This document shows positions 23,701-50,125 of a DNA stretch of 64,000 nt, one piece after another. The notes under the pieces were generated by a model that did not search any database, was not told the origin of the DNA, and saw nothing but the letters and a program-made list of their open reading frames with translations. The position numbers and the translations under genes are program-made. The DNA lies in the NCBI GenBank assembly GCA_002269645.1, contig NIVC01001345.1, positions 1-64,000 on the forward strand. The letters are read 5' to 3'. This stretch comes from Macrostomum lignano. Lineage: Eukaryota. Positions within the stretch are counted from its first letter, which is position 1. Each line of letters begins with the position of its first letter.

Positions 23701-26700
23701 AATTCCTCCTACCTGTGGTATTGCAAAGAGACGCTACATGTAGTTTATTAAAAAACTTGTATTGCATTTTTTGGCTCCCCAACGGGGGGCGCATTGCATA
23801 AGGCTCTGAACGTCGAGCTCCCCGAAAATCTGCGTCAGCATCTCGCATGGCAGTGCGTACATGTTTAGCTGCAACAATGTTTAATGTCTGGGGTCGATCT
23901 CATGCTCCTGCTCATTCTCTAGCTATATATAGCCTACGTGCCCATGTACTTTCCTATAGTTCTCCTACGATAAGTCTTATGTTCCAGCGAAAAGAGAAAA
24001 AGGAACTCTCAAAATATGTCGCTGTGCGCAAACGAACGCTTCTTCCGTAGTTACAGAATACAATTCATTTATTTATTTTCATACAGACAATAAGTCTCGC
24101 AATGTGCAGGCACAAACCAAAGTAGCGCGCGCAAGGATACATCTGTTGGAAAAGTGAACAAGTGACAAATAGTATCGGGGCCACATTTTGACCGCATCTG
24201 ACCGCAATTCGATCTTTTTTGACCGCGTTTCAACCGTATTTGACCTCATCAAGCTCATAAAAAATGGTCGAGGTGAACGTTTTTGGCCCGTTTCTTGACC
24301 GAATCTGACCGCAATTCGACCGTTTTTGACCGTATTTCGAACGTAATTTGACCTCATCAATTTGACCGCAAAAAACGGTCGAGGTGAACCGTTTTTTGGC
24401 ATGGTACGCAAAATCCGGTCAACTGCGGTCGAAGTGCGGTCACAAAGCGTAATTATTTTTTGCCGGGAGGTAAGTCGCAAAATCAAAAATGCGAAAAACG
24501 AAAAATTTGAGAAAGAAAGGAGAGGAAGAGAAAAAGAAAAGAAAGGAGGGAAAAGAGAGAGAGGGGAAGAGAAGAGAGAAAGAGAAAGAGAAGAAAAGAG
24601 AAAAAGACAAGAAAAGTCATATACAAAGTAAAAATAAGTTGCAATTGGGAGAACTAAGTCGCAATTGGAGGAACTAAGTCGCAATTGGGAGGAACTAAGT
24701 CGCAATCAGGAGGAACTAAGTTGCAAATCTGGACAAAACTAAGTTGCACCGGACGGGTGAAATTTTGAGGTTGGGCATGTATGATCTAATATAATATAAC
24801 ATATCAGATAATTTTTAATTAGTAGCTACTAACAAGTTATATCATTTAAGTCACTATAAATTGCCTGTTAGACATTTCCAATGTACTTATTGGTGAACAT
24901 TTTCGCATAGAAGTCCATGCTAAAGCATTTATGTACTAACTAGCCATCATGGGTGAATCTAATGAACAAATATTTCAATGGCTTCACAATTCACAGTGAT
25001 ACTATAGCACAGAGTGATCAATCAAGAGAACTGTATTCTGCAAATCAGTCTAATAACTTTTTGAAAGAAAAAAGTGTTCAGGGTTTAATATTTTTTCTTT
25101 TTGTTTGAATAACATTCAGAAATGCATAGAATAAGATTTTTTCACTATCTTCCAAAACTGCAGGTCAGTTCGAGTGTTACTTCGCCGCGATAATGGACAG
25201 TTCTGGCCCAGTGTGTGCCAATTTCTTTCTAGTAAGTGCTTTATGTGTATCTAATTTAAGCTTTCGTTTGTTCTAAAGATATTCTAACTTTGAAGCATGC
25301 TGATTTCTGTAGATTTTTTTGTTGCTCAAATTCAAATTGATGTCACTTTTACTAAAGACATTTTGGGCTATACCCATTTTTATTTTCCATATATAGTTTT
25401 CGAAACATTATCATTTTAATTGTAGCATACGAGTACAATCATATAGGTCAATCCCTGGATGTCTTTTTAGCAGCACAAATTCGGTGCTAATGACGTCAAT
25501 AAATTGCAGATAAGCATAGGCCTTGTATACACGGGGTATGAAGTTGATCCATAAATATCTATTTTTAGCAACACAATTTAATGCTAATGACGTCAAAAAA
25601 TTTCAGCCAATCAGAGGCGTTCTATACACGGGGTGCGAAATCAACCCATATAAATGTCTATTTTTAGCAACACAATTTGGTTGATGACGTCAGTTAACTT
25701 GTAGCCAATCAGATGCATTTTAGATAGAAATAGGTTCCAGGATAGGCACTTTTTAATATCTATTTTTCACAATACATTTCTCTATGACCAAAGCGTCATG
25801 TCACGAACTTTGGATTCAAAAATAATTCCCAGGCCCCTGCAGCAGTCTGGCCTATTCAGAGGAATCACGCAGCCTGTTTGTCGGCTGCGACTCCGGTCTG
25901 GTGTCCGAATTCAGCCTGGCCGAGGACTACAATAGCGTTGAATTGCGCCGGGAATATCAGGCTCACAATGGCCGCGTGACCGCCTGCATTCACGCTATTC
26001 ACCAAGAGTGGGTCATTAGCTGCGCCAAGGACCGCTATCTGGTGTGGCATAGCGTCCAGACTGGAAGGCGATGCGGCAGCTACTTGGCTGGGGCGCCTTG
26101 CACAGCCCTGCAGTATGACCATCCAACCAGGTTAGCCTTGGTGGATTGTGGGGCACTGGCTGAAACATCATGAGATCGCTGAAGCATCATGGGGGTCACG
26201 GTCACTGAAGCATCATGGGGTCACGGTCACTGAAGCATCATGGGGGTCACTGAAACATCATGGGGTCACGGTCACTGAAGCATCATGGGGGTCACTGAAA
26301 CATCATGGGGTCACTGAAGCATCGTGAGGTCACTGGAGCATCATGGGGTCACTGAAGCATCATGGGGTCACTGAAGCATCATTGGGGCCACTGAAGTATC
26401 ATGAGGTCACTGAAGCGTCATGGGGTCACTGAAGCGTCATGGGGTCACTGAAGTATCATGGGGGTCACTGAAGCTTCATGGGGTCACTGGAGCATCAATG
26501 GGGTCACTGAAGTATCATGGGGGCACTGAAGCATCATTGGGGTCACTGGAGCATCATGGGTTCATTGGAGCATCATGAGGTCACTGAAGCGTCATGGGGT
26601 CACTGAAGCATCATTGGGGCCACTGAAACATCATTGGGGCCACTGAAGCATCATTGGGGTCACTGGAGCATCATGAGGTCACTGAAGCATCATTGGGGCC

Positions 26701-29700
26701 ACTGAATCATCATGGGGGTCACTGAAGCATCATTGGGGCCACTGAAGCATCATTGGGGCCACTGAAGCATCATTGGGGTCACTGGAGCATCATGGGGTCA
26801 TTAAAGCATCATGGGGTCATTAGAGCATCATTGGGGCCACTGAAGCATCATTGGGGTCACTGGAGCATCATTGGGGCCACTGAAGCATCATTGGGGTCAC
26901 TGGAGCATCATTGGGGCCACTGAAGCATCATTGGGGCCACTGAAGCATCATTGGGGTCACTGGAGCATCATTGGGGTCACTGGAGCATCATTGGGGTCAC
27001 TGGAGCATCATTGGGGTCACTGGAGCATCATGAGGTCACTGAAGCATCATTGGGGCCACTGAATCATCATGGGGGTCACTGAAGCATCATTGGGGCCACT
27101 GAAGCATCATTGGGGCCACTGAATTATCATGGGGGTCACTGAAGCATCATTGGGGCCACTGAAGCATCATTGGGGTCACTGGAGCATCATTGGGGTCACT
27201 GGAGCATCATTGGGGCCACTGAAGCATCATTGGGGCCACTGAAGCATCATTGGGGTCACTGGAGCATCATTTGAGCCACTGAAGCATCATTGGGGTCACT
27301 GGAGCATCATTGGGGTCACTGGAGCATCATGAGGTCACTGAAGCATCATTGGGGCCACTGAATCATCATGGGGGTCACTGAAGCATCATTGGGGCCACTG
27401 AAGCATCATTGGGGTCACTGGAGCATCATTGGGGCCACTGAAGCATCATTGGGGTCACTGGAGCATCATTGGGGTCACTGGAGCATCATGAGGTCACTGA
27501 AGCATCATTGGGGCCACTGAATCATCATGGGGTCACTGAAGCATCATTGGGGCCACTGAAGCATCATTGGGGCCACTGAAGCATCATTGGGGTCACTGGA
27601 GCATCATTGGGGCCACTGAAGCATCATTGGGGTCACTGGAGCATCATTGGGGTCACTGGAGCATCATGAGGTCACTGAAGCATCATTGGGGCCACTGAAT
27701 CATCATGGGGGTCACTGAAGCATCATTGGGGCCACTGAAGCATCATTGGGGCCACTGAAGCATCATTGGGGTCACTGGAGCATCATTGGGGCCACTGAAG
27801 CATCATTGGGGTCACTGGAGCATCATTGGGGTCACTGGAGCATCATGAAGTCACTGAAGCATCATTGGGGCCACTGAATCATCATGGGGGTCACTGAAGC
27901 ATCATTGGGCCACTGAAGCATCATTGTGGCCACTGAAGCATCATTGGGGTCACTGGAGCATCATTGGGGTCACTGGAGCATCATTGGGGCCACTGAAGCA
28001 TCATTGGGGTCACTGGAGCATCATGGGGTCATTGGAGCATCATTGGGGCCACTGGAGCATCATGGGGGTCACTGAAGCATCATTGGGGCCACTGAAGCAT
28101 CATTGGGGTCACTGGAGCATCATTGGGGTCACTGGAGCATCATGAGGTCACTGAAGCATCATTGGGGCCACTGAATCATCATGAGGGTCACTGAAGCATC
28201 ATTGGGGCCACTGAAGCATCATTGGGGTCACTGGAGCATCATTGGGGCCACTGAAGCATCATTGGGGTCACTGGAGCATCATGAGGTCACTGAAGCATCA
28301 TTGGGGCCACTGAATCATCATGGGGTCACAGAAGCATCATTGGGGCCACTGAAGCATCATTGGGGTCACTGGAGCATTATTGGGGCCACTGAAGCATCAT
28401 TGGGGTCACTGGAGCATCATTGGGGTCACTGGAGCATCATGAGGTCACTGAAGCATCATTGGGGCCACTGAATCATCATTGGGGTCACTGGAGCATCATT
28501 GGGGCCACTGAAGCATCATTGGGGTCACTGGAGCATCATGAGGTCACTGAAGCATCATTGGGGCCACTTAATCATCATGGGGGTCACTGAAGCATCATTG
28601 GGGCCACTGAAGCATCATTGGGGTCACTGGAGCATCATTGGGGCCACTGAAGCATCATTGGGGTCACTGGAGCATCATGGGGTCATTGGAGCATCATTGG
28701 GGCCACTGAAGCATCATGGGGGTCACTGAAGCATCATTGGGGCCACTGAAGCATCATTGGGGTCACTGGAGCATCATTGGGGTCACTGGAGCATCATTGG
28801 GGCCACTGAAGCATCATTGGGGTCACTGGAGCATCATGGGGTCATTGGAGCATCATGGGGTCATTGGAGCATCATGGGGTCATTGGAGCATCATTGGGGC
28901 CACTGAAGCATCATTGGGGTCACTGGAGCATCATTGGGGCCACTGAAGCATCATTGGGGTCACTGGAGCATCATGGGGTCATTGGAGCATCATGGGGTCA
29001 CTGGAGCATCATGGGGTCATTGGAGCAGGGTGCACGACAATTGACTGCCACAATTTGACTGCCGACAAAGCACTTGCTTTCATAAACGCGAAACTTCACA
29101 ACCGGTAAAACTTTTGCACTTACTTTCATATACTGCAGTCTTTTTATTTTTTTCGCGTTCATAAAGGCATGCTTTGGAAATTGAGGTATATGTTTTTTAC
29201 ATGAAACAAAGACTTACCTTAGAACTGTGTTCTTAATTGTATTATAAAGGTAATGTATTCTGTTCTGCATCATTCTAAATACAATATTTCACTTACATGC
29301 ATAGACTTAAAAAGGGTGACAGAGTGCTAAACTTTAGGAGCATCATTTTGCTGGCAGTCAAATTGCCGCAGTCATATTGTGGCAGTCAATTGTCGTGAGG
29401 TCATGAGGTCACTGAAGCATCATGAGGTCACTGGAGTATCAACCCTGCCACCCGACCTCTCTCCTTCCCAGGTACGCCTTCCTCTCCGACCAGTCGGGCG
29501 TGGTGACCATTCTCCGCCTCACCGAGAACTCATTGGAGCTCATCAACGTGCTCAAGGGTCACTCGGCTGCGGTGACAGACTTGGCTTGGGATGCCAGAAG
29601 GAACCAGCTGTACTCGGCGTCTCAGGACAACGCCGTCATCATGTGGGACATCGGGGGCGGCGAGGGCAAGGCCTACGAGCTGCAGGCGCACCGGGGCTCG

Positions 29701-32517
29701 GTGAACAGCCTGGTGTTCGCGGCCACGTCCAGGGAGTGCATCTCTGCTGGCTCCGATGGCAATTTGGTTCGCGCTTACTGACTGGCTGCTTCTGGGGGTC
29801 TGGGGTAGTCTGCTTTGGGGTGTGTAGGGGTTTTGAGATTGTAGAGAGTCTGGGGAATCGGAGTTTGACTCGTGGAACTTGTGGGGAATTAGTGATGTAA
29901 ATTGATGAGGAATTAGTGATGTAAATTGAGGGGGAATTAGTGATGTAAATTGAAGGGGAATTAGTGATGTAAATTGATGGGGAATTAGTGATGTAAATTG
30001 AAGGGGAATTAGTGATGTAAATTGATGGGGAATTAGTGATGTAAATTGAAGGGGAATTAGTGATGTAAATTGAGGGGGAATCAGTGATGTAAATTGATGA
30101 GGAATTAGTGATGTAAATTGAAGGGGAATTAGTGATGTAAATTGAAGGGGAATTAGTGATGTAAATTGAAGGGGAATTAGTGATGTAAATTGATGGGGAA
30201 TTAATGATGTAAATTGAGGGGGAATTAATGATGTAAATTGAGGGGGAATTAGTGATGTAAATTGAGGGGAATTAATGATGTAAATTGAGGGGAATTAATG
30301 ATGTAAATTGAGGGGGGAATTAGTGACGTAAAATGAGGGGGAATTAATGATGTAAATTGAGGGGGAATTAGTGATGTAAATTGAGGGGGAATTAGTGATG
30401 TAAATTGAAGGGGAATTAGTGATGTAAATTGAAGGGGAATTAGTGATGTAAATTGATGGGGAATTAGTGATGTAAATTGAAGGGGAATTAGTGATGTAAA
30501 TTGAGGGGGAATTAGTGATGTAAATTGAGGGGGAATTAGTGATGTAAATTGAAGGGGGAATTAGTGATGTAAATTGAAGGGGAATTAGTGATGTAAATTG
30601 ATGGGGAATTAGTGATGTAAATTGAGGGGGAATTAGTGATGTAAATTGAGGGGGAATTAGTGATGTAAATTGAAGGGGAATTAGTGATGTAAATTGAGGG
30701 GGAATTAGTGATGTAAATTGAAGGGGAATTAGTGATGTAAATTGATGGGGAATTAGTGATGTAAATTGATGAGGAATTAGTGATGTAAATTGAAGGGGAA
30801 TTAGTGATGTAAATTGAGGGGGAATTAGTGATGTAAATTGAAGGGGAATTAGTGATGTAAATTGATGGGGAATTAGTGATGTAAATTGAAGGGGAATTAG
30901 TGATGTAAATTGAGGGGGAATTAATGATGTAAATTGAGGGGGAATTAATGATGTAAATTGAGGGGGAATTAGAGATGTAAATTGAGGGGGAATTAATGAT
31001 GTAAATTGAGGGGGAATTAATGATGTAAATTGAGGGGGGGAATTAGTGACGTAAAATGAGGGGGAATTAATTATGTAAATTGAGGGGGAATTAGTGATGT
31101 AAATTGAGGGGGAATTAGTGATGTAAATTGAGGGGGAATTAGTGATGTAAATTGAGGGGGAATTAGAGATGTAAATTGAGGGGGAATTAGTGATGTAAAT
31201 TGAGGGGGAATTAGAGATGTAAATTGAGGGGGAATTAGTGATGTAAATTGAAGGGGAATTAGTGATGTAAATTGATGGGGAATTAGTTATGTAAATTGAA
31301 GGGGAATTAGTGATGTAAATTGATGGGGAATTAGTGATGTAAATTGAAGGGGAATTAGTGATGTAAATTGAGGGGGAATCAGTGATGTAAATTGATGAGG
31401 AATTAGTGATGTAAATTGAAGGGGAATTAGTGATGTAAATTGAGGGGGAATTAGTGATGTAAATTGAGGGGGAATTAGTGATGTAAATTGGTGGGAATTA
31501 GTGATGTAAATTGGTGGGAATTAGTGATGTAAATTGGTGGGAATTAGTGATGTAAATTGGTGGGAATTAGTGATGTAAATTGGTGGGAATTAGTGATGTA
31601 AATTGGTGGGAATTAGTGATGTAAATTGGTGGGAATTAGTGATGTAAATTGGTGGGAATTAGTGATGTAAATTGGTGGGAATTAGTGATGTAAATTGGTG
31701 GGAATTAGTGATGTAAATTGAGGGGGAATTAGTGATGTAAATTGGTGGGAATTAGTGATGTAAATTGGTGGGAATTAGTGATGTAAATTGGTGGGAATTA
31801 GTGATGTAAATTGGTGGGAATTAGTGATGTAAATTGAGGGGGAATTAGTGATGTAAATTGAGGGGGAATTAGTGATGTAAATTGGTGGGAATTAGTGATG
31901 TAAATTGGTGGGAATTAGTGATGTAAATTGGTGGGAATTAGTGATGTAAATTGAGGGGGAATTAGTGATGTAAATTGAGGGGGAATTAGTGATGTAAATT
32001 GGTGGGAATTAGTGATGTAAATTGGTGGGAATTATAGATATAGGCCTGTATATCCGTGGAAGCCAGGCCAACATCCCCGCCCGTTGCTCCCCGCGGCCAG
32101 GTGTTCTGGTGCATGTCGGTGCCGCGCCGCGAGACCCCCAGCTGGTCAGAGTCGGACGTGTGCTCCAAATGCGGCGTGCCGTTCTTTTGGAACCTGCGCA
32201 AGATGTGGTCGGACAAGCGAGTCGGCACCAGGCAGCACCACTGCAGGCGGTGCGGCGCCGCCGTGTGCGACGCCTGCTCTCAGCGCCGCACAGCCCTGCC
32301 GCCGATGGGCTTCGAATACTCGGTTAGGGTCTGCGACGACTGCCACGCCGAGGTGACGCCAGACGATCTGACACCCCTGGCCGCTGTGTTCGAAGCCAAG
32401 CAGGATGTTCAGAAGATGGCCCTGTGCGAGACCCGGCGCTGGCTGCTCAGCCTGGGCAAGGAGGGCACCGTGAAGGTGTGGGACCTGGCCTCCGTGCTGC
32501 TGCCCAGTGCGGATTGA
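11795..32517 (+). CDS. WDFY2: WD repeat and FYVE domain-containing protein 2 (WDFY2/ProF-like), 5 exons
   Basis: Exons: 11795-11955 (RKPELIFRIE..ILPKETGIIAVYEDR), 25164-25231 (SVRVLLRRDNGQFWPSV), 25833-26130 (SEFSLAEDYN..AHNGRVT), 29472-29766 (GHSAAVTDLAWD..VIMWDIGG), 32101-32517 (FYVE: ETPSWSESDVCSKCGVPFFWN..RQHHCRRCG..CDAC..VRVCDDC). Phases are all compatible and the protein is colinear with the WDFY1/2 sequence as I recall it; the WDFY2 versus WDFY1 label is a single-copy ortholog convention. Confidence 0.92.
12773..14065 (-). mobile_element. Full-length mariner (DD34D) transposon, probably irritans-type
   Basis: Perfect 28-bp TIRs CGAGGGGCACTATTAAAGTTCTGAGCCT (12773-12800 and 14038-14065); TA TSD at 12771-72 and 14066-67; 1293 bp. 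Confidence 0.95.
12836..13903 (-). CDS. Mariner transposase (~355 aa from MAFSQEL)
   Basis: HTH region, WIPRIL, TGDETW, HDNAPAH, YSLDLAPSDF; 34 residues between the 2nd and 3rd Asp; uninterrupted ORF. Confidence 0.95.
   Translation of the reverse strand: MAFSQELKLEHRAVIKFLTLEGSKPAEIQSRMASVYADAAPSYATIKRWAAEFKRGRDSLEDDPRCGRPRTAVTADNIQRIQALVDIDQRVKVRELAADTGLSDPQVIEILHQHLHLSKVSARWIPRILTRDQKTARVQYSKLVLDSYDPDPANFLSCCVTGDETWIHHHDPESKQESKQWLPVGSPAPLKARTACSAGKIMLTVFWDAKGPLLLDFLPHKQTVTGAYYADLIARLRKAIKENRRGMLSRGVVLLHDNAPAHTSRIAKAAVSVAGFRELPHPAYSLDLAPSDFHLFPHLKRALRGQRFDTDDALKDAATAWFEGCSVQFFQSGIEALRSRCHKCILVGGDYVEKS
15273..17379 (-). pseudogene. CACTA accessory ORF2 (coiled-coil + BEN-like domain), multi-exon, frameshifted
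   Basis: Segments VRWFVLEFAEDRREW, CPACRNLQLEVSRV, heptad coil 16455-16250, VRTLARTFFSDVQLTCLNVTGQK and WVLTGAVELLRNMATARR resemble BEN helices; 63-bp C-terminal repeats. Confidence 0.5.
17030..17175. repeat. 27-bp repeat (GCAGCAGACACGGCGTCGGTCGATGCA-type) inside CACTA ORF2
   Basis: About 5 tandem copies. Confidence 0.85.
17660..17813. mobile_element. 154-bp near-perfect palindrome (hairpin MITE-like)
   Basis: Arms GCGCAACCTAGGGAATCACCCGGCCGTTTCTATTGG.. and its reverse complement; no TSD found. Confidence 0.7.
17814..18980 (-). pseudogene. 5' fragment of CACTA/EnSpm (Tnp2-type) transposase
   Basis: Acidic N-terminus; LSQNGVQRLLNLLHRLVPDNALPRTVYKL; CSAC..CSRC. Predicted intron 18013-17911 then GVLDVHSSVLYREF..DVSYTVAY, broken where the first catalytic xDG is expected. 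Confidence 0.7.
19335..19600. repeat. 23-bp minisatellite (ATCATAGAAGCGTCATGTAAACA), decaying rightwards
   Basis: Tandem array. Confidence 0.85.
19600..20503. repeat. Diverged ~430-bp tandem repeat with (TTAGGG)n-like islands; continues at 23723-23790
   Basis: TGTCGAAGTT..GATTCATTTGGGAAT at 19851 and 20281; (T/G)CATGTAGTTTA-type motif near 19729, 20187 and 23735; GGTTAGGGTTAGGGTTAGGGTTAG at 20401-20424. Confidence 0.7.
20509..23717 (+). mobile_element. Transib/Chapaev-type (RAG1-related) DNA transposon, 3209 bp
   Basis: ~248-bp TIRs beginning CACAGGTAGG (3 mismatches counted); termini CAC...GTG; perfect 5-bp TSD GTATT (20504-08, 23718-22). Confidence 0.85.
21245..23250 (+). pseudogene. RAG1/Transib-fold DDE transposase (~667 aa) with Chapa-type N-terminal Zn domain; two +1 frameshifts
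   Basis: H-x7-C-x2-C...P-x3-C-x2-C (HEENLQALCAMC..PSGICDGC); KIGM[D]GGSLKV broken at ~22230; ACDLKLANI..YPCTWC; PPPELHL; FKGN; frameshift ~23025; PKVHCVFVH; SEQAGESAHHDF. Confidence 0.8.
26160..29025. repeat. 20-bp minisatellite (GGGGTCACTGAAGCATCATT) in WDFY2 intron 3; remnant also at 29398-29435
   Basis: Tandem array. Confidence 0.95.
29033..29397. mobile_element. ~365-bp MITE-like element with ~30-bp inverted termini
   Basis: CACGACAATTGACTGCCACAATTTGACTGC ... GCAGTCATATTGTGGCAGTCAATTGTCGTG; interrupts the minisatellite; no clear TSD. Confidence 0.65.
29890..32030. repeat. 23-24-bp minisatellite (GGGAATTAGTGATGTAAATTGAG) in WDFY2 intron 4
   Basis: Tandem array. Confidence 0.95.
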
Positions 32518-33890: not shown

Positions 33891-34359
33891 AGATCCCAGT
33901 ATATCATTGTACTACTTGGTGACCGCATGAAAGTGTCAATTTTACAGCAGAGTCTCCCTCTTGTACTCTTCAATTTGTTAATACAGTCGTATGTTTTTTT
34001 CTGTAGACATTTCAAGATAACTTTATTTGTGTTCTGAACTTTTATTACACATAATCATCAAGGTTACTAATTTTTGTTTTGCTTATTTCCTCGTAGCCTT
34101 GTGCTGTCTGCTGTTCAACTATACTGTGAAGAAATGTTTATTTTTATTGTAAACAGTTATTATATCTATTATTAAAATAAGTCAATTCTACCTACGCGTG
34201 TTTTGTTAAAACGGCCTCCAATGCTATTCCGAATCTTGAATGCAGCAATACCGCGCTTATTCAGTGTTGTAATTTCATATCATCTTTATACTGGTCTGGA
34301 TTGCTGTTAGATGGCGGTGTCTTTAGGCAATATTATGAATTAAATTCTAATTCACTGGA

Positions 34360-36020
34360 ATCACAATTCACACCAGAAACCCCAATTCACACCTGAAACC
34401 CCAATTCACACCTGAAATCCCAACTCACACCAGAAATCCCAACTCACACCAGAAATCCCAATTCACACTAGAAACCCCAATTCACACTTGAAATCCCAAC
34501 TCACACTAGAAACCCCAATTCACACCTGAAATCCCAACTCACACCAGAAATCCCAATTCACACCAGAAATCCCAACTCACACCAGAAATCCCAATTCACA
34601 CCAGAAATCCCAATTCACACCAGAAATCCCAATTCACACCAGAAATCCCAACTCACACTAGAAATCCCAATTCACACCAGAAATCCCAACTCACACTAGA
34701 AATCCCAATTCACACCAGAAATACCAATTCACACCAGAAATCCCAATTCACACCAGAAATCCCAATTCACACCAGAAATCCCAACTCACACTAGAAATCC
34801 CAATTCACACCAGAAATCCCAACTCACACCAGAAACCCCAATTCACACTTGAAATCCCAACTCACACTAGAAACCCCAATTCACACCTGAAACCCCAATT
34901 CACACCTGAAATCCCAACTCACACCAGAAATCCCAATTCACACCAGAAATCCCAACTCACACCAGAAATACCAATTCACACTTGAAATCCCAACTCACAC
35001 TAGAAACCCCAATTCACACCTGAAACCCCAATTCACACCTGAAATCCCAACTCACACCAGAAATCCCAACTCACACCAGAAATCCCAATTCACACCAGAA
35101 ATCCCAATTCACACCAGAAATCCCAACTCACACTAGAAATCCCAATTCACACCAGAAATCCCAACTCACACCAGAAATCCCAACTCACACTAGAAACCCC
35201 AATTCACACCTGAAATCCCAACTCACACTAGAAACCCCAATTCACACCTGAAACCCCAATTCACACTTGAAATCCCAACTCACACTAGAAACCCCAATTC
35301 ACACCTGAAACCCCAATTCACACCTGAAATCCCAACTCACACCAGAAATCCCAACTCACACCAGAAACCCCAATTCACACCAGAAATCCCAATTCACACC
35401 AGAAATCCCAATTCACACTAGAAACCCCAATTCACACCAGAAATCCCAATTCACACCAGAAATCCCAATTCACACTAGAAACCCCAATTCACACTTGAAA
35501 TCCCAACTCACACTAGAAACCCCAATTCACACCTGAAATCCCAACTCACACCAGAAATCCCAATTCACACCAGAAATCCCAACTCACACCAGAAATACCA
35601 ATTCACACCAGAAATCCCAATTCACACCAGAAATCCCAATTCACACCAGAAATCCCAACTCACACTAGAAATCCCAATTCACACCAGAAATCCCAACTCA
35701 CACCAGAAATCCCAACTCACACTAGAAACCCCAATTCACACTTGAAATCCCAACTCACACTAGAAACCCCAATTCACACCTGAAACCCCAATTCACACCT
35801 GAAATCCCAACTCACACCAGAAATCCCAATTCACACCAGAAATCCCAACTCACACCAGAAATACCAATTCACACCAGAAATCCCAATTCACACCAGAAAT
35901 CCCAACTCACACCAGAAATCCCAATTCACACCAGAAATCCCAACTCACACCAGAAATCCCAACTCACACCAGAAATCCCAACTCACACCAAAAATCCCAA
36001 TTCACCTGAAATCACAATTC
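34360..36020. repeat. 19-bp minisatellite (CACACCAGAAATCCCAATT)
   Basis: Tandem array. Confidence 0.95.
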
Positions 36021-36509
36021 ACGCCAAAGATTGCACTTCTTCAAGTGATTACACTTGGACATTGTTTCAGTTGCCTGGTCAGGCCATATCTCTAATAATT
36101 AATAATGCTTTCTACTGTGAATTTTGTAAAATTGTCGTCACAGATGTCGCACAGCTATTGAATTATTAATTCAGTTTAATTTTGATTGAAATAGCTTTGC
36201 CCTATATATTAATCTTTATATGTTGGATTATTGTAGTACATAAATATATTATAATATTGGTTATTATTAATCAGAGTTCGCCAATGGTCACCGTTTCTTA
36301 TTAAAACTTCATTTTTATCTTGCGCGTTCGTCAGTCAAGTGAAGATCAAACGTGTACAAATTTAGTGACACTAAATTTGTGCCGGAAAAAATTGAAAGCT
36401 CCTGTCTTTTTCGTGCAAGTTTTGCACAGTTGCCAGCCTGCAGGAGACGACAGGAGCTCAACTTTTGTCACCTCTTGGGCGTGGCAGATCCGGCATCTAC
36501 CGGCCTAGG

Positions 36510-36786
36510 AGACAGGGGCGCCCACCGAGACACAGGGGCGCCCACCGAGAGCCAGGGGCGCTCACCGAGAGCCAGGGGCGCTCACCGAGAGCCAGGGGCG
36601 CTCACTAAGAGACAGGGGCGCCCATCAAGAGACACTGGTGCAAGGACTACTAGTGTTCCTAGTGGTCCTTGCACTGGTGCCCACCAAGAGCCAGGTACGC
36701 CCACCAAGAGACAGGGGTGCCCACCAAGAGACAGGGGTGCCCACCAAGAAACAGGGACGACCACGTACTGTACCAAGAGCCAGGGG
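36510..36786. repeat. 20-bp minisatellite (GAGACAGGGGCGCCCACCAA), left part; resumes 41217-41610
   Basis: Same unit on both sides of the LINE insertion. Confidence 0.9.
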
Positions 36787-36792
36787 TCGGGA

Positions 36793-36884
36793 GGTTCTGC
36801 CTCCCGGAGCGCGCTCGCGCGCTTCCCATGGCTGCCGCCTTCACGCGGCGGGACCGTCCGGGTTCGCCCGGCCAAGTGCAGCCA
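36793..36884 (+). ncRNA. HDV/CPEB3-like self-cleaving ribozyme (predicted by hand)
   Basis: P1 GGUUCU(36793-98)/GGGACC(36850-55); P2 UGGCUGC(36829-35)/GCAGCCA(36878-84); P3 GCC/GGC; L3 UUCACGC; P1.1 G-U at 36856-57; P4 CCGGG-UUCG-CCCGG; J4/2 CCAAG with putative catalytic C36872. Confidence 0.7.
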
Positions 36885-39800
36885 CCACCCTGGACCCGTG
36901 CGAGGGTCTTCGAGCGCCCCGGGTTTTTCCACGCTGAGCCAGACCTCCCAGCTCACCTGGCTCAGCTGCTTCTCAGAGCTGGAGACGTCGAGTCCAACCC
37001 TGGGCCGGCCTTCCCGTGCGGAGGCTGTGCCGAGGAGGTGGCCAGGGGCTACTCCACCCGCTGCTCCGGCTGCGGCCTGTGGTGGCACCGCCGCTGTTCC
37101 CGCCTCACTATTGCGGCTATCAACCGGCTCCACCGGGACAATGCGCCGTGGCACTGCCCCACCTGTGCCCCCCAGCCTGCCGCTTCAGCGCCGCAGCCCG
37201 CCGCGACTCCGGCCCCCTCCGCGGCTGCAGGCCCCACTGGCACCCACCAGACGCCAACGGCCACGACTCCACCTCCCCCGAACCCCGCGCCGGCACTTCC
37301 CCCCCTGATGGCGCAACCAGCGCGGGCGGGGGCGCCGAACAACAGCGGGGCGGCTTTCCGCATCGTCCAGCTCAACGCGGCAGGGCTCCGCTCCCGCAAG
37401 CTGGAACTGCTCCACTTCCTGGAGAAGCAGGGCGCCGACGTCGCCTGCATCCAGGAGACGAACCTGTCCGGCCACACAGCGGCCCCACGCCTCAAAGGGT
37501 GGCAGATCGCTGGCCGGAAGGACCGCAACACCGGCCGCGACGGGGAGGCAGCCAGAACCCACCACGGGGGCGTCTGCTTCCTTGTCAAGGAGGGCATTCA
37601 ATTCGCCGACCTTCCACTAGGCGAGCTCGTCACCCACGCCACGTCCGCCGAAGCCTCGGGCCTCCGTATCCACGACCCCCGGCTTCCGCGCCCCCTGGAT
37701 GTGATCAACATCTACCTCCCACCGGTCCGCGCCGCAGACGGCCGCACGGACGCCTTCGAGCCCGACTGGATCCCCGTTTCACGGGACTCGTTGGTGCTGG
37801 GCGACTTCAACGCCCACCACGGGATGTGGGACGCCTCGGCGGACGACGACGAGCTGGGCAGGGCCCTCGAAGACTGGGCGACGACCTACGACCTAGTCGC
37901 TCTGAACGACGGCTCCCCAACTAGGATCAGCCCCCGCGGCCTGCCGAGCTCCCCTGACGTCTCCTTCGCCCACGCCTCCCGGCAAGACCGGATTGAGTGG
38001 CGAACCGGGGAGCACATCGGCTCGGACCACCTGCCGATCATCATCGACATCGCAGCCTCCGGCCCGGCCCGCTCCAGCTCCAAGCGCCTGACGCGGTACG
38101 CCTACCACAAGGCGGACTGGGACCTGTTCCAGCGGACCCTCGACGAGGCCCTGGCCAGCTGGCCGGAGCGCCCCCCACGCACGGTGCCCGTCGCCGCCAG
38201 CCGGTTCGCGTCCGCCGTCACCAGCGCCGCCAAGGCGGCCATCCCGAGAGGCTGCCGGCGCGCCCCGATCGCCTGGTGGTGCCCGGAAGCCGAGGCGGCC
38301 TGCACCGCCCGCCGCGCAGCGCTCGAAGCGCTTCGCGCGAGCCCGGACGACCCGGCGCTCTCGGCCGCGTACCAGGCTGCTGCCGCCGCGGCTGCTCACG
38401 CCATCTGCCGCGCCAAGGAGTCGCTGTGGCGTGATTTCATCACCGACACGGGTCACGACCTGTGCTCCACCGACCTCTGGCGGATCATCCGGGCCCTCGA
38501 CGGACGGTCCCAGGGCACCCCCTCGTCGGCTGCCATCCAGGGCTCCACGGGGGCATCGGCCGTCTCCGACAAACAGAAGGCCGCGCTTTTCTGCCGGGAG
38601 TACGCCGCCGTCAGCAGGCTCCCCAAGAACAAGACGGAAGACCGGCCGGTCATCCAAGAAGCCCGTCACACGCTCCGCGCCCCCTGCAGCTGCCAAGGCC
38701 TCCGCAGCGGCCCCTGCTCCGACTTCCAGCCCGACGCCCTCCGCCGCGCCTTGGTGCGCCTGCCGGACCGCTCGGCCCCGGGACCGGACGGGGTCGCGAA
38801 CATCATGCTGAAGCATCTGTCCGACCTGGGGCTCCGCTGCCTCCTGGACCTCCTGAACCTCTCGTGGAGGACGGGGGAGGTGCCCGCCCCGTGGCGCCTT
38901 GCGGAGATCCGCCCGATCCCCAAATCGGACAAGCCAGCCGGCCTGACATCCAGCTTCCGCCCTATCAGCCTCCTCAGCTGCCTGGGCAAGCTCGCCGAGA
39001 AGATGGTGAACGAGCGGCTGTCCTACATCCTCGAGGCAAATGACGCCCTCCACCCGTCGCAAGCCGGTTTCCGTCAGGGCCGCTCCACGGAGGAGCACAT
39101 CGCCGCGGCGGCCCAGTACATTTTTGACGGTTTCCAGGCCAAGAAGCCGGCAGCCCGCACCGCCCTGCTCCTTGCAGACTTCTCCAGAGCCTACGACCGC
39201 GTCTGGAGAGCCGCCCTCATCGTCAAGCTCGGTCGGAAGGGGATCCCCACCTGCCTCATCCGCTGGCTCAAGGGATTTCTCTCCGACAGGAGGGCCTTCG
39301 TGCGGTGGGTTAGTGCGGCCTGCAAGCCAACCGTGTTCTCCGAGGGGCTGCCGCAAGGGTCGGTCCTTGCCCCGATCCTGTGGGTGATCTACATGGACGA
39401 CCTCCTGGACGGCGCCCCCAAGAACTGCCTCACGCTGGCGTACGCCGACGACAGCACCTTCGGCGCGCAAGGGACCACCCCTCGGGAGTGTGAGCGGGCC
39501 CTGCAACCGGCGGCCGACGGGCTCGTGCGCTGGTCCCAAACCTGGAAGGTGGACCTGAGCCGCACCAAGTCGGTCGTCGCTTTCTTCTCGCTCGACCCCC
39601 GGGAGGTCAACGGAAAGGTCCAGCCGCGCATCCTCCTCGGCGACTCGCCAGCTCCGTTCGAGCTGCACCCGAGGCTCCTGGGAGTGCACCTCGACTCCCA
39701 GCTGACCTTCCGCCACCACGCCAAGCTCCGGCGCCGCGCCCTCCAGCAGCGCACCGGCGTCCTACGCTGCCTCGCGGGCCGCGACTGGGGCCAGGACGGC

Positions 39801-41205
39801 CAGCGCCTCGCCCAGCTCTACCGCACCTACGCGGAGGCGGCCGCGCTCCACGGCGCCTCCACGTGGCTCACCTTCGCGTCCGACTCCTGCCGGGAAGAAG
39901 TCGAGATTGCACATCGATCGGCCGCTCGCGTCATCACTGGCTGCTGCCGCTCGACCGCCATTGGCGCCCTCCTGGCTGAGGCCGACCTCGTGCCCCTGGC
40001 GACCAGAGCGGAGGCGGCAGGCGCAGCCCTGTTCGAGCGAGCCCTCCGTCACCGACAACCGACTCCGCTCCGCGCTGCAGCGGGCAAGACCTCTACGCCC
40101 CGCTTGCGCGCTCACGGGGAGCCTGGGGCCTTCCGCAGGAACTGGCGCGACTCGGCGCAGCACCTGAGCGCCGCCGCCGGCCTGGCCCCCTCCCCCGGGA
40201 GCAGGAGAACCTCCCTCCGCCGCCATGGTCCGACACCAGCCGGGTCATCATCCGCTGCGACCTCCTGACCGCGACCTCCCGAGAGGACGCGCCCCACGTC
40301 AGAAAGCTGGCCGCGCTGGAGACGCTGGCGAGCCTCCCGCCCGCCGACCTGGAGCTCTGGACAGACAGTTCAGCCTCCGGGGGCACCCTCAACGGCGGAG
40401 CGGGGGCGGTCATCTTCAGCAAGACCGCGCCGCCAGTCCACCTGTCGCAGGCTGCGGGCCGTTACTCTTCCTCCTTCCGTGCCGAGGAGTCGGCTCTCCG
40501 GCTGGGGCTTCAGCACGCCGCCTCCAGGCCGGACCTTGCCTCCCTGAGCGGCCTCCGCTGCCTGACGGACTCGCAGTCCCTGCTCCGAGCCCTCGAGAAG
40601 GGACCGTCCAAGTCCTCCTCGCCAGCGTGCCGGGAGATCTGGACGCTGCTGACCCACGTCGCCGCCCGCTTCCCCATCTGGCTGCAATGGGTCCCCAGCC
40701 ACTGCGACCTCCGGCGGAACGATGCTGCGGACGTCACCGCCAAGACCGCGGCCGGCCTCCCCAGGACGAGACGCCGATCGGCTTCGGTTCTGCACGGGCC
40801 GCCCTCCGCCGGGTCCTCGCCGAGCGCACCCGCGAAGCCAACGTGGCCGACCCGCACTGCGCCACCCACCGTCTGGCAACCGCCATCGCCGCCCCGCGGC
40901 CACGCCTTAACCGGGCCGACGCGGTGACCCTCGCCCAGCTGCGCACGGGCCACTCACCGCTCCTGCGCTGGTATCGGCACCGGATCGGCCTGGACACCGC
41001 CGCCACCTGCCCCCGCTGCGGGGCCGCCGACGAAGACGTGGCCCACGTCCTCCTGCACTGCCGGGCCCTTGACGACCTTCGGGCCCGCATCCTTGGGCCA
41101 AACCCGTCCCTGGCCGTCCTCTCGACGGACGGCCTCCGCGCGCTCGATTTCCTCCGCACGGTAGGGGCGCAGACACGCCCCCCGGATCCTACCGGCCGGG
41201 AGTAA
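36828..41205 (+). CDS. LINE polyprotein (~1459 aa if two 1-bp C-run deletions are corrected): 2A peptide, PHD, APE endonuclease, RT, RNase H, CCHC
   Basis: QLLLRAGDVESNPGP; C4HC3 PHD; QLNAAG, CIQET, GDFNAH, SDHLP; FRPISLLS, QAGFR, LPQGS, YADD; WTDSS, RAEE, TDSQS, NDAAD; CPRC..H...HC. Frameshifts at ~40195 and ~40760. Confidence 0.88.
36963..37007 (+). other. 2A-like StopGo ribosomal-skipping peptide
   Basis: Encodes QLLLRAGDVESNPGP, matching the D(V/I)ExNPG|P consensus. Confidence 0.9.
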
Positions 41206-42277
41206 CAACAACAACAACCAAGAGCCAGGGGCGCCTAACGAGAGACAGGGGCGCCCACCAAGAGACAGGGCCGCCCACCAAAAGACAGGGCCGCCCACCA
41301 GGAGAAAGGGGCGCCCAACAAGAGACCGGGGCAACCACCAAGAGACAGGGGCGCCCACCAAGAGACAGGGCCGCCCACCAAAAGACAGGGCCGCCCACCA
41401 GGAGAAAGGGCGCCCAACAAGAGACCGGGGCAACCACCAAGAGACAGGGGCGCCACCAAGAAACAGGGCCGCCCACCAAGAAACAGGGGCGCCTAGCAAG
41501 AGAAAGGGGCGCCCAACAAGAGCCTGAGGCACCCAACAAGAGACCGTGGCAACCACCAAGAGACAGGGCCGCCCACCAAGAGCCAGGGGCGACCACCAAG
41601 AGATGGTTGTGCCTACCAAGAGGCGTGTACACTGGTAGTAAATGTACAGTTCAAGTTAAAAGTATTAACTGCTATTAAGATTAACTGTTAAAACTGATTG
41701 CATCCGACAAACAACTTGTACCGATGCAGTCTCTGGCTTGGGGATCTGGCTTGCTCTGCACAGACGCATGCCGCCAAATCTAATCCAGTTAATTAGTCTC
41801 CCTAGCTTCGTACTCCCCCAACATCTCACAGCCAATTTCTCTCTTTATGCTTTCTGTTTACCTTGGACAAACCTGCCGTGTGGCCTTGGGGCCCCTGCTC
41901 CGCTAAGTCTGCTGCAATTAATTTGAATGAATTTGAGCATGAGCACACTTTCTCTCTTCCCCAAGCAGCGTGTTGGGCAAACAGCTGCCTCAGTCGGTCT
42001 GGAGCTGCTTAATCCGCGGGCTTCCAGCTGCTCAGGCTCGACATCAATTTGCCACCCCCCTGCGCAAGCGGTCTGTCTGTGCGCCACTGGAATCGATTGC
42101 GAAGCAAATTTTTGTTAATAGCAACTTTTCTCAAAGACCATCTGTGAGTTTTCTCAATCCTTGGGATTGGAATTGGTGCCTTGGCTTTGGGACTTGGCAG
42201 TGGCATATTTTTCTGGGCACACAGCTTGCTCTGGCAGTGCGGCTGGGAGGGAAAATTTTCTTGGACACAGTAGGATT

Positions 42278-45412: not shown

Positions 45413-50125
<4,713 letters not shown>

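What the first reader, a model, noticed from the sequence alone, without database searches (positions are those of the whole stretch)
36793..36884. HDV/CPEB3-like self-cleaving ribozyme at the 5' end of the LINE, overlapping its start codon
Seen: a complete nested double-pseudoknot can be drawn - P1 6 bp (2 G-U), P2 7 bp, P3 3 bp, L3 UUCACGC (human CPEB3 has UUCACGU), single-pair P1.1, UUCG-capped P4, J4/2 CCAAG, and a hairpin in J1/2. The cleavage site falls 6 nt from the TSD, and the AUG (36828) overlaps the P2 strand. Known: HDV-like ribozymes process the 5' ends of R2, RTE and L1Tc/Ingi elements and can support translation of uncapped RNA. Inference: a functional ribozyme that is simultaneously protein-coding for about 19 codons.
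Basis: partly seen in the sequence, partly recalled or inferred. Interest (0 to 1): 0.82.

Follow-up and report, generated by a model that had tools for sequence, protein, structure and literature searches.

The report
HDV-like ribozyme heading a LINE
The first 92 bases of a LINE retrotransposon fold into a complete HDV-type self-cleaving ribozyme that also holds the element's start codon, which is a new example of a known way for such elements to trim their own RNA rather than a new kind of system.

Summary

- **Published descriptor:** it is the only match in the window and 90 related LINE loci to my re-implementation of hdv-stemP4-ins. That descriptor gave no hits in 400 composition-matched shuffles or in catalytic-C decoys.
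- **Relatives:** the same fold sits just upstream of the 2A-ORF in two related elements, L201 (53% aa identity) and L203 (34%). P1, P2, P3 and P4 have different sequences, and 10 of 22 pairs change on both sides. L3, J1/4 and J4/2 are conserved.
- **Host element:** a 4.4-kb single-ORF LINE (2A-like peptide, PHD finger, APE, RT, RNase H, zinc knuckle, (CAA)n tail, 14-bp TSD) inserted in a minisatellite. This is the L1Tc/ingi layout of ribozyme plus N-terminal 2A.
- **Start codon:** AUG 36828 is the only AUG that can start the 2A-PHD-APE-RT frame. It lies at the J1/2-P2 junction, so 19 codons are ribozyme.

Caveats:
- No Rfam family matches.
- Catalysis is untested.
- The copy carries at least two frameshifts.
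- Its own 6-nt junction filler forms a hairpin that competes with P1.

Verdict: a new member of a known kind, of moderate interest.

The parts
36773..36786 (+). 5' copy of the target-site duplication CCAAGAGCCAGGGG
   Evidence: Identical 14-mer at 41218-41231. It lies within the 20-nt minisatellite unit.
36787..36792 (+). 6-nt junction filler TCGGGA between the TSD and the predicted cleavage site. With G36793-94 it is the reverse complement of 36800-36806.
   Evidence: I4: 36788-36794 / 36800-36806, 7 nt, 100%. The hairpin is -13.7 kcal/mol against -3.8 to -4.1 for P1.
36793..36884 (+). HDV-like self-cleaving ribozyme (nested double pseudoknot). Predicted scission is 5' of G36793.
36793..36798 (+). 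P1 5' strand GGUUCU (pairs with 36850-36855 GGGACC)
   Evidence: It covaries in L201 (GCUUCC/GGAAGC) and L203 (GCCUUC/GAAGGC).
36806..36825 (+). Hairpin inside J1/2 (8 bp, loop CUCG; P1.2-like peripheral helix)
   Evidence: The role of J1/2 helices is described in PMC4908430.
36828..36830 (+). Start codon of the element's ORF, at the J1/2-P2 junction
   Evidence: It is the only in-frame ATG upstream of the 2A and PHD region.
36829..36836 (+). P2 5' strand (pairs with 36876 and 36878-36884; U36877 is bulged)
   Evidence: I6.
36837..36849 (+). P3 (GCC/GGC) enclosing L3 UUCACGC. C36842 makes P1.1 with G36856.
   Evidence: The same core recurs in phage HDV-like ribozymes.
36850..36857 (+). P1 3' strand GGGACC plus J1/4 GU
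36858..36871 (+). P4 hairpin CCGGG-UUCG-CCCGG
36872..36875 (+). J4/2 CCAA. C36872 is at the position of the catalytic cytosine.
   Evidence: The CNRA requirement comes from the published descriptor.
36876..36884 (+). P2 3' strand G-(U)-GCAGCCA
36945..37007 (+). 2A-like StopGo peptide ...LLLRAGDVESNPG|P. It would release a 59-aa leader whose first 19 codons are ribozyme.
   Evidence: The motif is shared by relatives. Known in LINEs (PMC3708506).
37017..37166 (+). PHD-like zinc finger
   Evidence: Pfam PF00628, E=1.8e-4, below the gathering score.
37368..38042 (+). APE-type endonuclease domain
   Evidence: Pfam PF03372 and PF14529.
38916..39581 (+). Reverse transcriptase domain
   Evidence: Pfam PF00078, E=1.4e-31.
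40346..40753 (+). RNase H domain, in a different frame from RT (a frameshift in this copy)
   Evidence: Pfam PF00075, E=4.9e-9. Frames. The relative P0013 is in one frame.
40978..41067 (+). C-terminal CCHC zinc knuckle (zf-RVT-like), in a third frame
41203..41217 (+). Stop codon TAA and (CAA)4 3' tail
41218..41231 (+). 3' copy of the target-site duplication

Best explanation
Window 36793-36884 is the 5'-terminal HDV-like self-cleaving ribozyme of a single-ORF, APE-type LINE with this layout: 2A peptide, PHD finger, APE, RT, RNase H, zinc knuckle.

Proposed mechanism:
- The element is transcribed as part of a longer host read-through transcript.
- The nested double pseudoknot (P1/P1.1/P4 stacked beside P2/P3) places C36872 of J4/2 against the phosphate 5' of G36793.
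- The RNA cuts itself there. This gives a retrotransposon RNA with a defined, uncapped, structured 5'-OH end.
- Translation starts at AUG 36828, inside the ribozyme at the J1/2-P2 junction.
- The 59-aa leader, whose first 19 codons are dictated by the ribozyme, is shed co-translationally at the 2A NPG|P site. The PHD-APE-RT-RNase H protein therefore carries no ribozyme-encoded peptide.

Shown here: the fold, its core nucleotides, its position, its conservation with compensatory changes in two relatives, and the reading-frame overlap.

Inferred: catalysis, co-transcription, cap-independent initiation and 2A activity.
For: 1. All helices and core nucleotides are present.

2. The site fulfils the published RNArobo descriptor hdv-stemP4-ins (text).
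- It is the only hit in the window plus 90 LINE loci, 457 kb on both strands.
- There were 0 hits in 400 dinucleotide shuffles of the 71% GC element, and 0 hits with the catalytic C replaced by A, G or U in 1.38 Mb.
- The authors report 11 hits for the stemP4 descriptors in about 2.1 Gbp of sea-urchin genome scanned, all 'confirmed ribozymes'.

3. Two relatives carry the same motif on the sense strand, just upstream of the 2A-ORF.
- L201 114-212 has its ATG at 243; its protein is 53% identical.
- L203 1740-1823 has its gene start at 1933.
- The looser descriptor has a decoy-estimated false-positive rate of about 1 per Mb. That predicts about 0.003 chance hits in those upstream stretches.

4. 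On the trimmed core alignment, 98.5% of cells pair and 10 of 22 pairs change on both sides. 0 of 500 shuffles reach this, and slid registers give 35-53% pairing. L3 (UUCNCGY), the J1/4 G and J4/2 CNAA stay fixed.

5. All three share the same oddities: a 6-bp P1 closed by G1-C, and a 1-nt bulge in P2 next to a C-G pair.

6. The same active-site core (GCC-UUCACGY-GGC, J1/4 GU, J4/2 CUAA or CCAA) recurs in over 100 phage loci that fit the HDV descriptor. That class has been shown to self-cleave (PMC10879173).

7. The ribozyme lies at the 5' end of a TSD-flanked LINE. This is the known niche of such ribozymes (PMC6765202). L1Tc combines one with an N-terminal 2A.

8. The nested part of the fold is -30.8 kcal/mol and P2 about -9. 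The total is therefore comparable with the non-pseudoknotted MFE of -43.5.
Against: - No Rfam HDV-type family matches any of the three sequences, even at E<=10.
- Only three sequences were available. Two of them were found with a descriptor that demands pairing, and the alignment was trimmed to fit the structure, so the pair counts lean towards it.
- The closing pair is G-C, not the classical G.U wobble. P1 is weak (6 bp with 2 G-U, about -4 kcal/mol).
- A 5-bp alternative hairpin competes with P3.
- In this copy the upstream 6 nt extend a 7-bp hairpin (-13.7 kcal/mol) that sequesters G36793-94.
- The element starts 6 nt before the cleavage site, not at it.
- The copy has at least two frameshifts, so it is not under selection now.
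- Five other relatives whose upstream sequence was read (L202, L204-L207), and the more distant LINE loci, show no such motif.
- The AUG-in-ribozyme arrangement is not shared in frame by L201 or L203.
Confidence: 0.8

Rival explanations
1. It is a catalytically dead or strongly attenuated relic. The family once had an HDV-like ribozyme, but this copy does not cleave. Possible causes are the G-C closing pair, the weak P1, the competing P3 register and the insertion-specific upstream hairpin. On this reading it is just sequence inherited by a dead element.
For: - The copy has at least two frameshifts.
- The upstream hairpin 36788-36806 is about 10 kcal/mol more stable than P1 and forms first in 5'-to-3' folding.
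- Flanking sequence is known to switch off L1Tc-type and R2 ribozymes.
Against: - No core position deviates from the published descriptor.
- G1-Y is allowed there and in PMC6326823. L1Tc-type active ribozymes even start with C1.
- The perfect 14/14 TSD suggests a recent insertion with little time to decay.
- This rival concerns only this copy, not the nature of the element.
Confidence: 0.15
2. It is a structured 5' element with the HDV topology whose role is not self-cleavage. It could be an IRES-like platform, a binding site for the element's protein, or a 5' exonuclease block, on an RNA that starts at an internal promoter near 36787.
For: - The element begins 6 nt upstream of the predicted cut, so the retrotransposed RNA may have included those bases.
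- HDV-like ribozymes of R2 and L1Tc are credited with translation, protein-binding and protective roles.
- Pr77 of L1Tc is both promoter and ribozyme.
Against: - These roles are described as additions to cleavage, not replacements for it.
- The catalytic C, the L3 U...CG and the P1.1 C-G are kept in all three relatives while the helices drift. A mere scaffold would not need that.
- The 6-nt filler is complementary to 36800-36806 in the exact register expected if reverse transcriptase folded back at a cDNA end corresponding to G36793 (inference).
Confidence: 0.07
3. It is a chance resemblance in G+C-rich coding sequence.
For: - A topology-only descriptor finds about 27 sites in 128 kb.
- The folding z-score of the 92 nt is only -0.8.
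- There is no Rfam hit.
Against: - Adding the conserved nucleotides leaves one site.
- There were 0 hits in 4.2 Mb plus 1.77 Mb of composition-matched shuffles.
- The motif recurs independently, with compensatory changes, at the same place in two relatives.
Confidence: 0.02

Closest known systems
L1TcRz / Pr77 ribozyme of the L1Tc/ingi clade LINEs of trypanosomatids
   Same: An HDV-like ribozyme occupies the first bases of a single-ORF APE-RT-RNase H LINE. An N-terminal 2A peptide, preceded by a short leader, follows it. The element is flanked by a TSD of about 12-14 bp.
   Different: - The L1Tc ribozyme is 77 nt, starts with C1 and doubles as an internal promoter. The papers describe it as lying in the 5' UTR.
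- Here the ribozyme starts with G1, has a 30-nt J1/2 with its own hairpin, and contains the AUG.
- The element also has a PHD finger and a (CAA)n tail instead of poly(A).
- No sequence comparison with L1Tc was possible.
HDV-like ribozymes of R2, R4, R6, SART, Baggins and RTE retrotransposons (Eickbush 2010; Ruminski et al. 2011)
   Same: The fold is the same, and so is the job proposed: to free the 5' end of a co-transcribed LINE RNA and to support translation of an uncapped RNA. Junctions are variable when cleavage is at the element's end.
   Different: - These are different LINE clades. R2 is site-specific and uses a restriction-like endonuclease.
- In R2 the start codon is still uncertain. 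Here a single AUG can be placed inside the ribozyme.
Mammalian CPEB3 ribozyme
   Same: - L3 is UUCACGU there against UUCACGC here. Mouse GTTCACGTCGC appears.
- From my own knowledge of the human sequence: J1/4 GU, a single C-G P1.1 pair and an effectively 6-bp P1.
   Different: - CPEB3 is intronic, not in a transposon.
- It has a G.U closing pair, a short J1/2 and J4/2 CGAA.
- Rfam's CPEB3 model does not match the window. The likeness is probably convergence on the few workable active-site sequences, as argued for R2.
Theta / minimal HDV-like ribozymes of gut phages (Kienbeck et al. 2024)
   Same: P3 GCC/GGC, L3 UUCACGY, J1/4 GU and J4/2 CUAA or CCAA are identical in many IMG/VR loci. The class was shown to cleave in vitro with C-to-U inactivation.
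   Different: - In phages P4 is mostly minimal or absent and J1/2 is very short.
- Those ribozymes sit next to tRNAs and outside ORFs.
drz-Agam-2 family with a structured J1/2 (P1.2) domain
   Same: A helix inside J1/2 that can pinch P1 and P2 together. That helix speeds cleavage by up to about 1000-fold in Agam-2.
   Different: In the window the hairpin has 7 and 3 unpaired nt on its two sides, and its effect is untested. L201 and L203 have almost no J1/2.
2A-encoding single-ORF APE LINEs of metazoans (Odon et al. 2013)
   Same: A 2A motif lies at the N-terminus of the ORF2-like protein, in some families followed by a PHD finger and then APE. Most lack ORF1.
   Different: That work does not mention ribozymes (0 occurrences). 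Most of those clades (CR1, L2, Rex1, Crack) lack RNase H, to my knowledge. The clade of the present element was not determined.

Membership tests
HDV-like (delta-like) self-cleaving ribozymes | Nested double-pseudoknot order: P1-J1/2-P2-P3-L3-P3'-P1'-J1/4-P4-J4/2-P2' | tested here: met
HDV-like (delta-like) self-cleaving ribozymes | Cytosine at the first position of J4/2 (general acid), within CNRA | tested here: met
   C36872 in CCAA. Decoys with A, G or U give no stemP4 hit. Its chemical role is not testable here.
HDV-like (delta-like) self-cleaving ribozymes | L3 with U...CG (reverse-wobble U.G) fitting UYYHCG(N)Y | tested here: met
   UUCACGC.
HDV-like (delta-like) self-cleaving ribozymes | P1.1: L3 cytosine(s) paired with G(s) that follow P1' | tested here: met
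   One pair, C36842-G36856. The second position is U/U. It is invariant in the three relatives.
HDV-like (delta-like) self-cleaving ribozymes | G1 paired with a pyrimidine at the cleavage site (classically a G.U wobble) | tested here: met
   G36793-C36855. G1-Y is what the descriptors require. It is not the G.U wobble of HDV and CPEB3.
HDV-like (delta-like) self-cleaving ribozymes | Helices kept by compensatory changes among homologues | tested here: met
   10 of 22 pairs change on both sides across three sequences. The sample is small and the alignment was fitted to the structure.
HDV-like (delta-like) self-cleaving ribozymes | Mg2+-dependent self-scission that gives 5'-OH and 2',3'-cyclic phosphate ends and is abolished by C-to-U | not testable with these tools
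   Needs an in vitro transcription and cleavage assay.
Rfam-curated HDV-type families (HDV ribozyme, CPEB3, drz-Agam and others) | Covariance-model match | tested here: not met
   No such match at the gathering score or at E<=10 in W, L201 or L203. The element is therefore not a member of any curated sequence family. The class as a whole is defined by structure.
LINE 5'-processing ribozymes (R2 / RTE / L1Tc type) | Sense strand, at the 5' terminus of the element, upstream of or at the ORF start | tested here: met
   The same holds in L201 and L203.
LINE 5'-processing ribozymes (R2 / RTE / L1Tc type) | Full-length copies begin at the cleavage site | tested here: inconclusive
   There is one copy, and it has 6 extra nt between the TSD and G36793. 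Those nt are complementary to 36800-36806. No TSD could be found in L201.
2A / StopGo peptides | C-terminal motif D(V/I)ExNPG|P with a suitable upstream tract | tested here: met
   LLLRAGDVESNPGP. Recoding activity is not testable here.
Ingi / L1Tc clade of LINEs | Placement in an RT phylogeny with named reference elements | not tested
   No reference sequences were on hand. Only the architecture (single ORF, 2A, APE, RT, RNase H, C-terminal zinc knuckle) agrees.

The most novel reading that the evidence does not exclude
In this LINE lineage the ribozyme and the N-terminal 2A would form one functional unit. Translation starts inside the ribozyme, at an AUG fixed at the J1/2-P2 junction, possibly because the folded ribozyme itself recruits or positions the ribosome on the uncapped 5'-OH RNA. 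The 2A peptide would then exist to discard the leader that the RNA structure forces on the protein. That would give a general reason why 2A sits at the N-terminus of so many single-ORF LINEs.

Hints:
- W and L203 both have AUG at the same structural position, and L201 has GUG there.
- The leader peptide is unconserved apart from a GF(F/L) motif about 27-29 residues before the 2A site.

Against:
- The L203 AUG is out of frame with its 2A.
- L201 starts 31 nt after its ribozyme.
Probability: 0.2. Interest if true: 0.6.

Novelty: new member of a known kind. Interest (0 to 1): 0.4.

Why it matters
The finding extends HDV-like 5'-processing ribozymes to a further lineage of LINEs. This lineage is not trypanosomatid in its layout: it carries a PHD finger, an RNase H domain and a 2A peptide.

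It gives an unusually clean case in which the start codon can be placed inside the ribozyme. The same 57 nt must therefore serve as catalytic RNA and as coding sequence. In R2 the start site is still uncertain.

It also links two literatures that have not been connected outside L1Tc: 2A peptides in metazoan-type LINEs and ribozyme-terminated LINE RNAs. Finally, it offers a compact natural module (ribozyme, AUG, 2A) for testing how uncapped, ribozyme-headed RNAs are translated.

Tried and rejected
- **Rfam.** The whole window at gathering score and three small-region E<=10 scans gave nothing HDV-like.
- **Other copies in the window.** There are none. The second LINE at 45413-48259(-) is only 27% identical in RT and 5'-truncated.
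- **First protein search.** The N-terminal 420 aa gave only relatives of about 30% identity, with no motif in their loci L001-L003.
- **Second protein search.** The N-terminal 125 aa found nothing.
- **Metagenome scan for close relatives.** It returned 80 distant APE loci with no motif.
- **Exact look-up of the window's own ORF.** It is not on record.
- **Scan of prokaryotic genomes for contaminant LINEs.** It gave two unrelated loci.
- **IMG/VR control (retracted).** I first treated the 117 IMG/VR matches to the core pattern as chance matches lacking the full fold. That control is invalid. The published loose-P4 descriptor shows most of them are genuine phage HDV-like ribozymes. My first descriptor missed them because it demands a P4 stem directly after J1/4.
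- **MAFFT on the full-length ribozymes.** It misaligned P1 and P4, so a trimmed core alignment was used.
- **Alternative cleavage site.** I looked for a P1 register that would put cleavage exactly at the TSD boundary. None pairs.
- **L203 frameshift idea.** A programmed frameshift at GGGUUUU might have reconciled the L203 AUG with its 2A frame. The required shift is +1, not -1, so I dropped it.
- **TSD in L201.** None was found.

Full report
**What is there.** The finding sits at the 5' end of a 4,431-bp non-LTR retrotransposon, window 36787-41217 on the + strand. The element is 71% G+C in a 48% G+C window and is single-copy in the window.

- It is flanked by a perfect 14-bp duplication, CCAAGAGCCAGGGG, at 36773-36786 and 41218-41231.
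- It ends in TAA(CAA)4.
- It interrupts a 20-nt minisatellite. The duplicated 14-mer is part of the satellite unit. Removing the element and one copy restores a regular unit, so I accept it as a TSD with that caveat.
- The ORF from ATG 36828 encodes a 2A-like motif (LLLRAGDVESNPGP), a PHD-like finger, an APE endonuclease and a reverse transcriptase.
- An RNase H domain (Pfam E=4.9e-9) and a C-terminal CCHC knuckle follow, in two other frames.
- The closest relative has all of these domains in one frame. This copy therefore carries at least two frameshifts.

- P1 is GGUUCU/GGGACC, 6 bp with two G-U pairs. G36793-C36855 is the closing pair.
- J1/2 is 30 nt and contains an 8-bp hairpin.
- P2 is UGGCUGC/GCAGCCA.
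- P3 is GCC/GGC.
- L3 is UUCACGC.
- P1.1 is C36842-G36856.
- J1/4 is GU.
- P4 is CCGGG-UUCG-CCCGG.
- J4/2 is CCAA, with C36872 at the catalytic position.
- C36836 can pair with G36876 across a bulged U36877, which extends P2.
- The repeat finder found the P2 arms and the J1/2 hairpin independently.
- ATG 36828 is the last base of J1/2 plus the first two bases of P2. It is the only in-frame ATG ahead of the 2A and PHD region. So 19 codons lie inside the ribozyme.

**Is it more than chance?** Ordinary folding says nothing either way (z = -0.8), because pseudoknots are not modelled. No Rfam family matches, even at E<=10.

I first wrote my own descriptor, after seeing the candidate.
- It hits only this site in both strands of the window.
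- It hits nothing in 4.2 Mb of dinucleotide shuffles of the element.
- It hits nothing in 83 related LINE loci.
- Topology alone gives about 27 sites per 128 kb. The conserved nucleotides therefore do the discriminating.

I then found the published RNArobo descriptors in the supplement of PMC4870747 and re-implemented them.
- The candidate satisfies hdv-stemP4-ins in every element.
- It is the only hit in 457 kb (both strands) of window plus LINE loci.
- That descriptor gave no hit in 400 shuffles of the element, and none when the catalytic C was replaced by A, G or U in 1.38 Mb.
- The authors report 11 hits, all 'confirmed ribozymes', from about 2.1 Gbp of sea-urchin genome scanned.
- My code is a re-implementation from text read by machine, not RNArobo itself.

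**A correction.** I had used 117 IMG/VR matches to the core pattern GCCTTCACGYGGCNNNNNNGT as a 'chance core' control. That was wrong. The loose-P4 descriptor shows that most of them are HDV-like ribozymes of phages, of the theta/minimal type that has been shown to self-cleave (PMC10879173). The result is still useful in another way. The window's active-site core (P3 GCC/GGC, L3 UUCACGY, J1/4 GU, J4/2 CUAA or CCAA) is one that recurs in that class.

**Relatives.** A search with the whole ORF found a 53%-identical protein (P0013, locus L201) and more distant ones. Two loci carry the motif on the sense strand, just upstream of the 2A-ORF.

| Feature | L201 114-212 (ATG at 243) | L203 1740-1823 (gene start 1933) |
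|---|---|---|
| P1 | GCUUCC/GGAAGC | GCCUUC/GAAGGC |
| P2 | UGCGGC/GCCGCA | UGGGAGC/GCUCCCG |
| P3 | ACC/GGU | CCC/GGG |
| L3 | UUCUCGU | UUCACGU |
| J1/4 | GU | GGG |
| P4 | 51 nt | 34 nt |
| J4/2 | CAAA | CAAA |

- Both fit my strict descriptor and the published loose-P4-ins descriptor.
- Decoys put the false-positive rate of the loose descriptor near 1 per Mb. About 0.003 chance hits are therefore expected in the upstream stretches examined.
- I built a core alignment with J1/2 removed and the P4 interior trimmed. On it, 98.5% of cells pair and 10 of 22 pairs change on both sides.
- No shuffle out of 500 reaches these values, and slid registers pair at 35-53%.
- All three share a G1-C closing pair, a 6-bp P1 and the bulged P2.
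- The sample is small and was selected by a pairing descriptor. The weight of the argument therefore rests on the motif recurring at the same place, not on the pair counts alone.
- Five other relatives whose upstream sequence I could read (L202, L204-L207) show no motif. Either their 5' ends are incomplete or they use something else.

**The 5' junction.** The six bases between the TSD and G36793 (TCGGGA), together with G36793-94, are the exact reverse complement of 36800-36806. There are two readings.
- **Fold-back copying.** Reverse transcriptase reached an RNA end at G36793, folded back on the CC/GG microhomology and copied a few bases. This would mark G36793 as the 5' end of the template RNA. 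It is an inference.
- **An intrinsic 5' hairpin.**

Either way, in this copy the hairpin (-13.7 kcal/mol) forms before P1 (about -4 kcal/mol) and is far more stable than it. This particular copy may therefore cleave poorly. Such context effects are documented for R2 and L1Tc-type ribozymes.

**How it most likely works.**
- The element is read through from host transcription.
- It then self-cleaves 5' of G36793.
- This produces an uncapped RNA headed by a compact pseudoknot. In R2 and L1Tc such a head is credited with protection and with cap-independent translation.
- Translation starts at AUG 36828.
- The 2A site releases a 59-residue leader, so the PHD-APE-RT-RNase H protein is free of ribozyme-encoded residues.

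Only the anatomy and its conservation are shown here. Catalysis, initiation and 2A skipping are inferred from the named families.

**Comparison with what is known.** HDV-like ribozymes at LINE 5' ends are established for R2, RTE, Baggins and L1Tc/ingi. L1Tc also has an N-terminal 2A preceded by a short peptide. The 2A-PHD-APE arrangement is known in metazoan LINEs, but the 2A papers do not mention ribozymes. The present element is therefore a new member of a known kind. Its particular feature is an identifiable AUG inside the ribozyme, which L201 does not share and L203 shares only out of frame. Clade assignment (Ingi-like by architecture) was not tested.

Noticed in passing
window 36945-37007: There is a canonical 2A/StopGo motif (LLLRAGDVESNPG|P) 59 codons into the LINE ORF, followed by a PHD-like finger (37017-37166). 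Nearly all relatives found also carry an N-terminal 2A, as GDVESNPGP, GIESNPGP or GQCPNPGP variants.
   Followed up: partly
window 36787-36806: The 6-nt junction filler plus G36793-94 is a perfect 7-nt inverted repeat of 36800-36806, with loop UUCUG. This may be a fold-back copy made by reverse transcriptase at the RNA 5' end. It competes with P1 in this copy.
   Followed up: partly
window 36929-36937; also L201 ~262-271, L202, L203, L204, L206, L207: The motif GGGTTTT(T/C)(G/C), encoding G-F-(F/L/S), lies about 27-29 residues before the 2A cleavage site. It is conserved in seven otherwise divergent elements. It could be part of the 2A nascent-chain tract or an RNA signal, and remains unexplained.
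   Followed up: no
window 40150-40800: RT, RNase H (40346-40753) and the C-terminal zinc knuckle (40978-41067) lie in three different frames. The 53%-identical relative P0013 has them in one frame. This copy therefore has at least two frameshifts.
   Followed up: yes
window 36509-36786 and 41218-41603: The LINE is inserted in a 20-nt minisatellite (ACCAAGAGACAGGGGCGCCC). The upstream part also holds a 21-nt-arm inverted repeat at 36633-36679, which drew weak microRNA-like Rfam hits.
   Followed up: partly
window, throughout (for example 1283-2059, 5240-6743, 26225-29027, 29883-32034, 34359-36026, 62478-63511): The window is unusually dense in long minisatellite arrays with 16-35-nt units, dozens of arrays up to 2.8 kb. 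One of them (29883-32034) is almost free of C on the + strand (GC skew 0.99).
   Followed up: no
window 45413-48259 (-): A second, unrelated LINE fragment carries RT and RNase H. It is 27% identical in RT, and no APE part or 5' end was identified.
   Followed up: partly
window 12836-13969 (-): There is a mariner/Mos1-type DDE transposase ORF (Pfam Transposase_1, HTH_48).
   Followed up: no
IMG/VR loci L084-L200: The 15-base core pattern taken from the window's ribozyme picks out more than 117 phage contigs. Most of these fit the published loose-P4 HDV descriptor (theta/minimal-type ribozymes). The identical active-site sequence is therefore widespread in phages.
   Followed up: partly
L002 ~212-299, L003 ~400-440, L204 ~170-200: More distant 2A-LINEs share a 5' hairpin with loop UCUUCGN or UCCUUGU. 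L002 fits the HDV topology except that no C sits at the catalytic position, so it hits only the decoy descriptors.
   Followed up: no
L203 1746-1748; L201 121-123: L203 has AUG, and L201 has GUG, at the same J1/2-P2 position as the window's start codon. Both are out of frame with the respective 2A-ORF as sequenced. L203 is a 2x-coverage contig.
   Followed up: partly
L201 4499-4519: The closest relative ends in TGA followed by a (GA)n tail instead of (CAA)n, so the 3' microsatellite differs between related elements.
   Followed up: no
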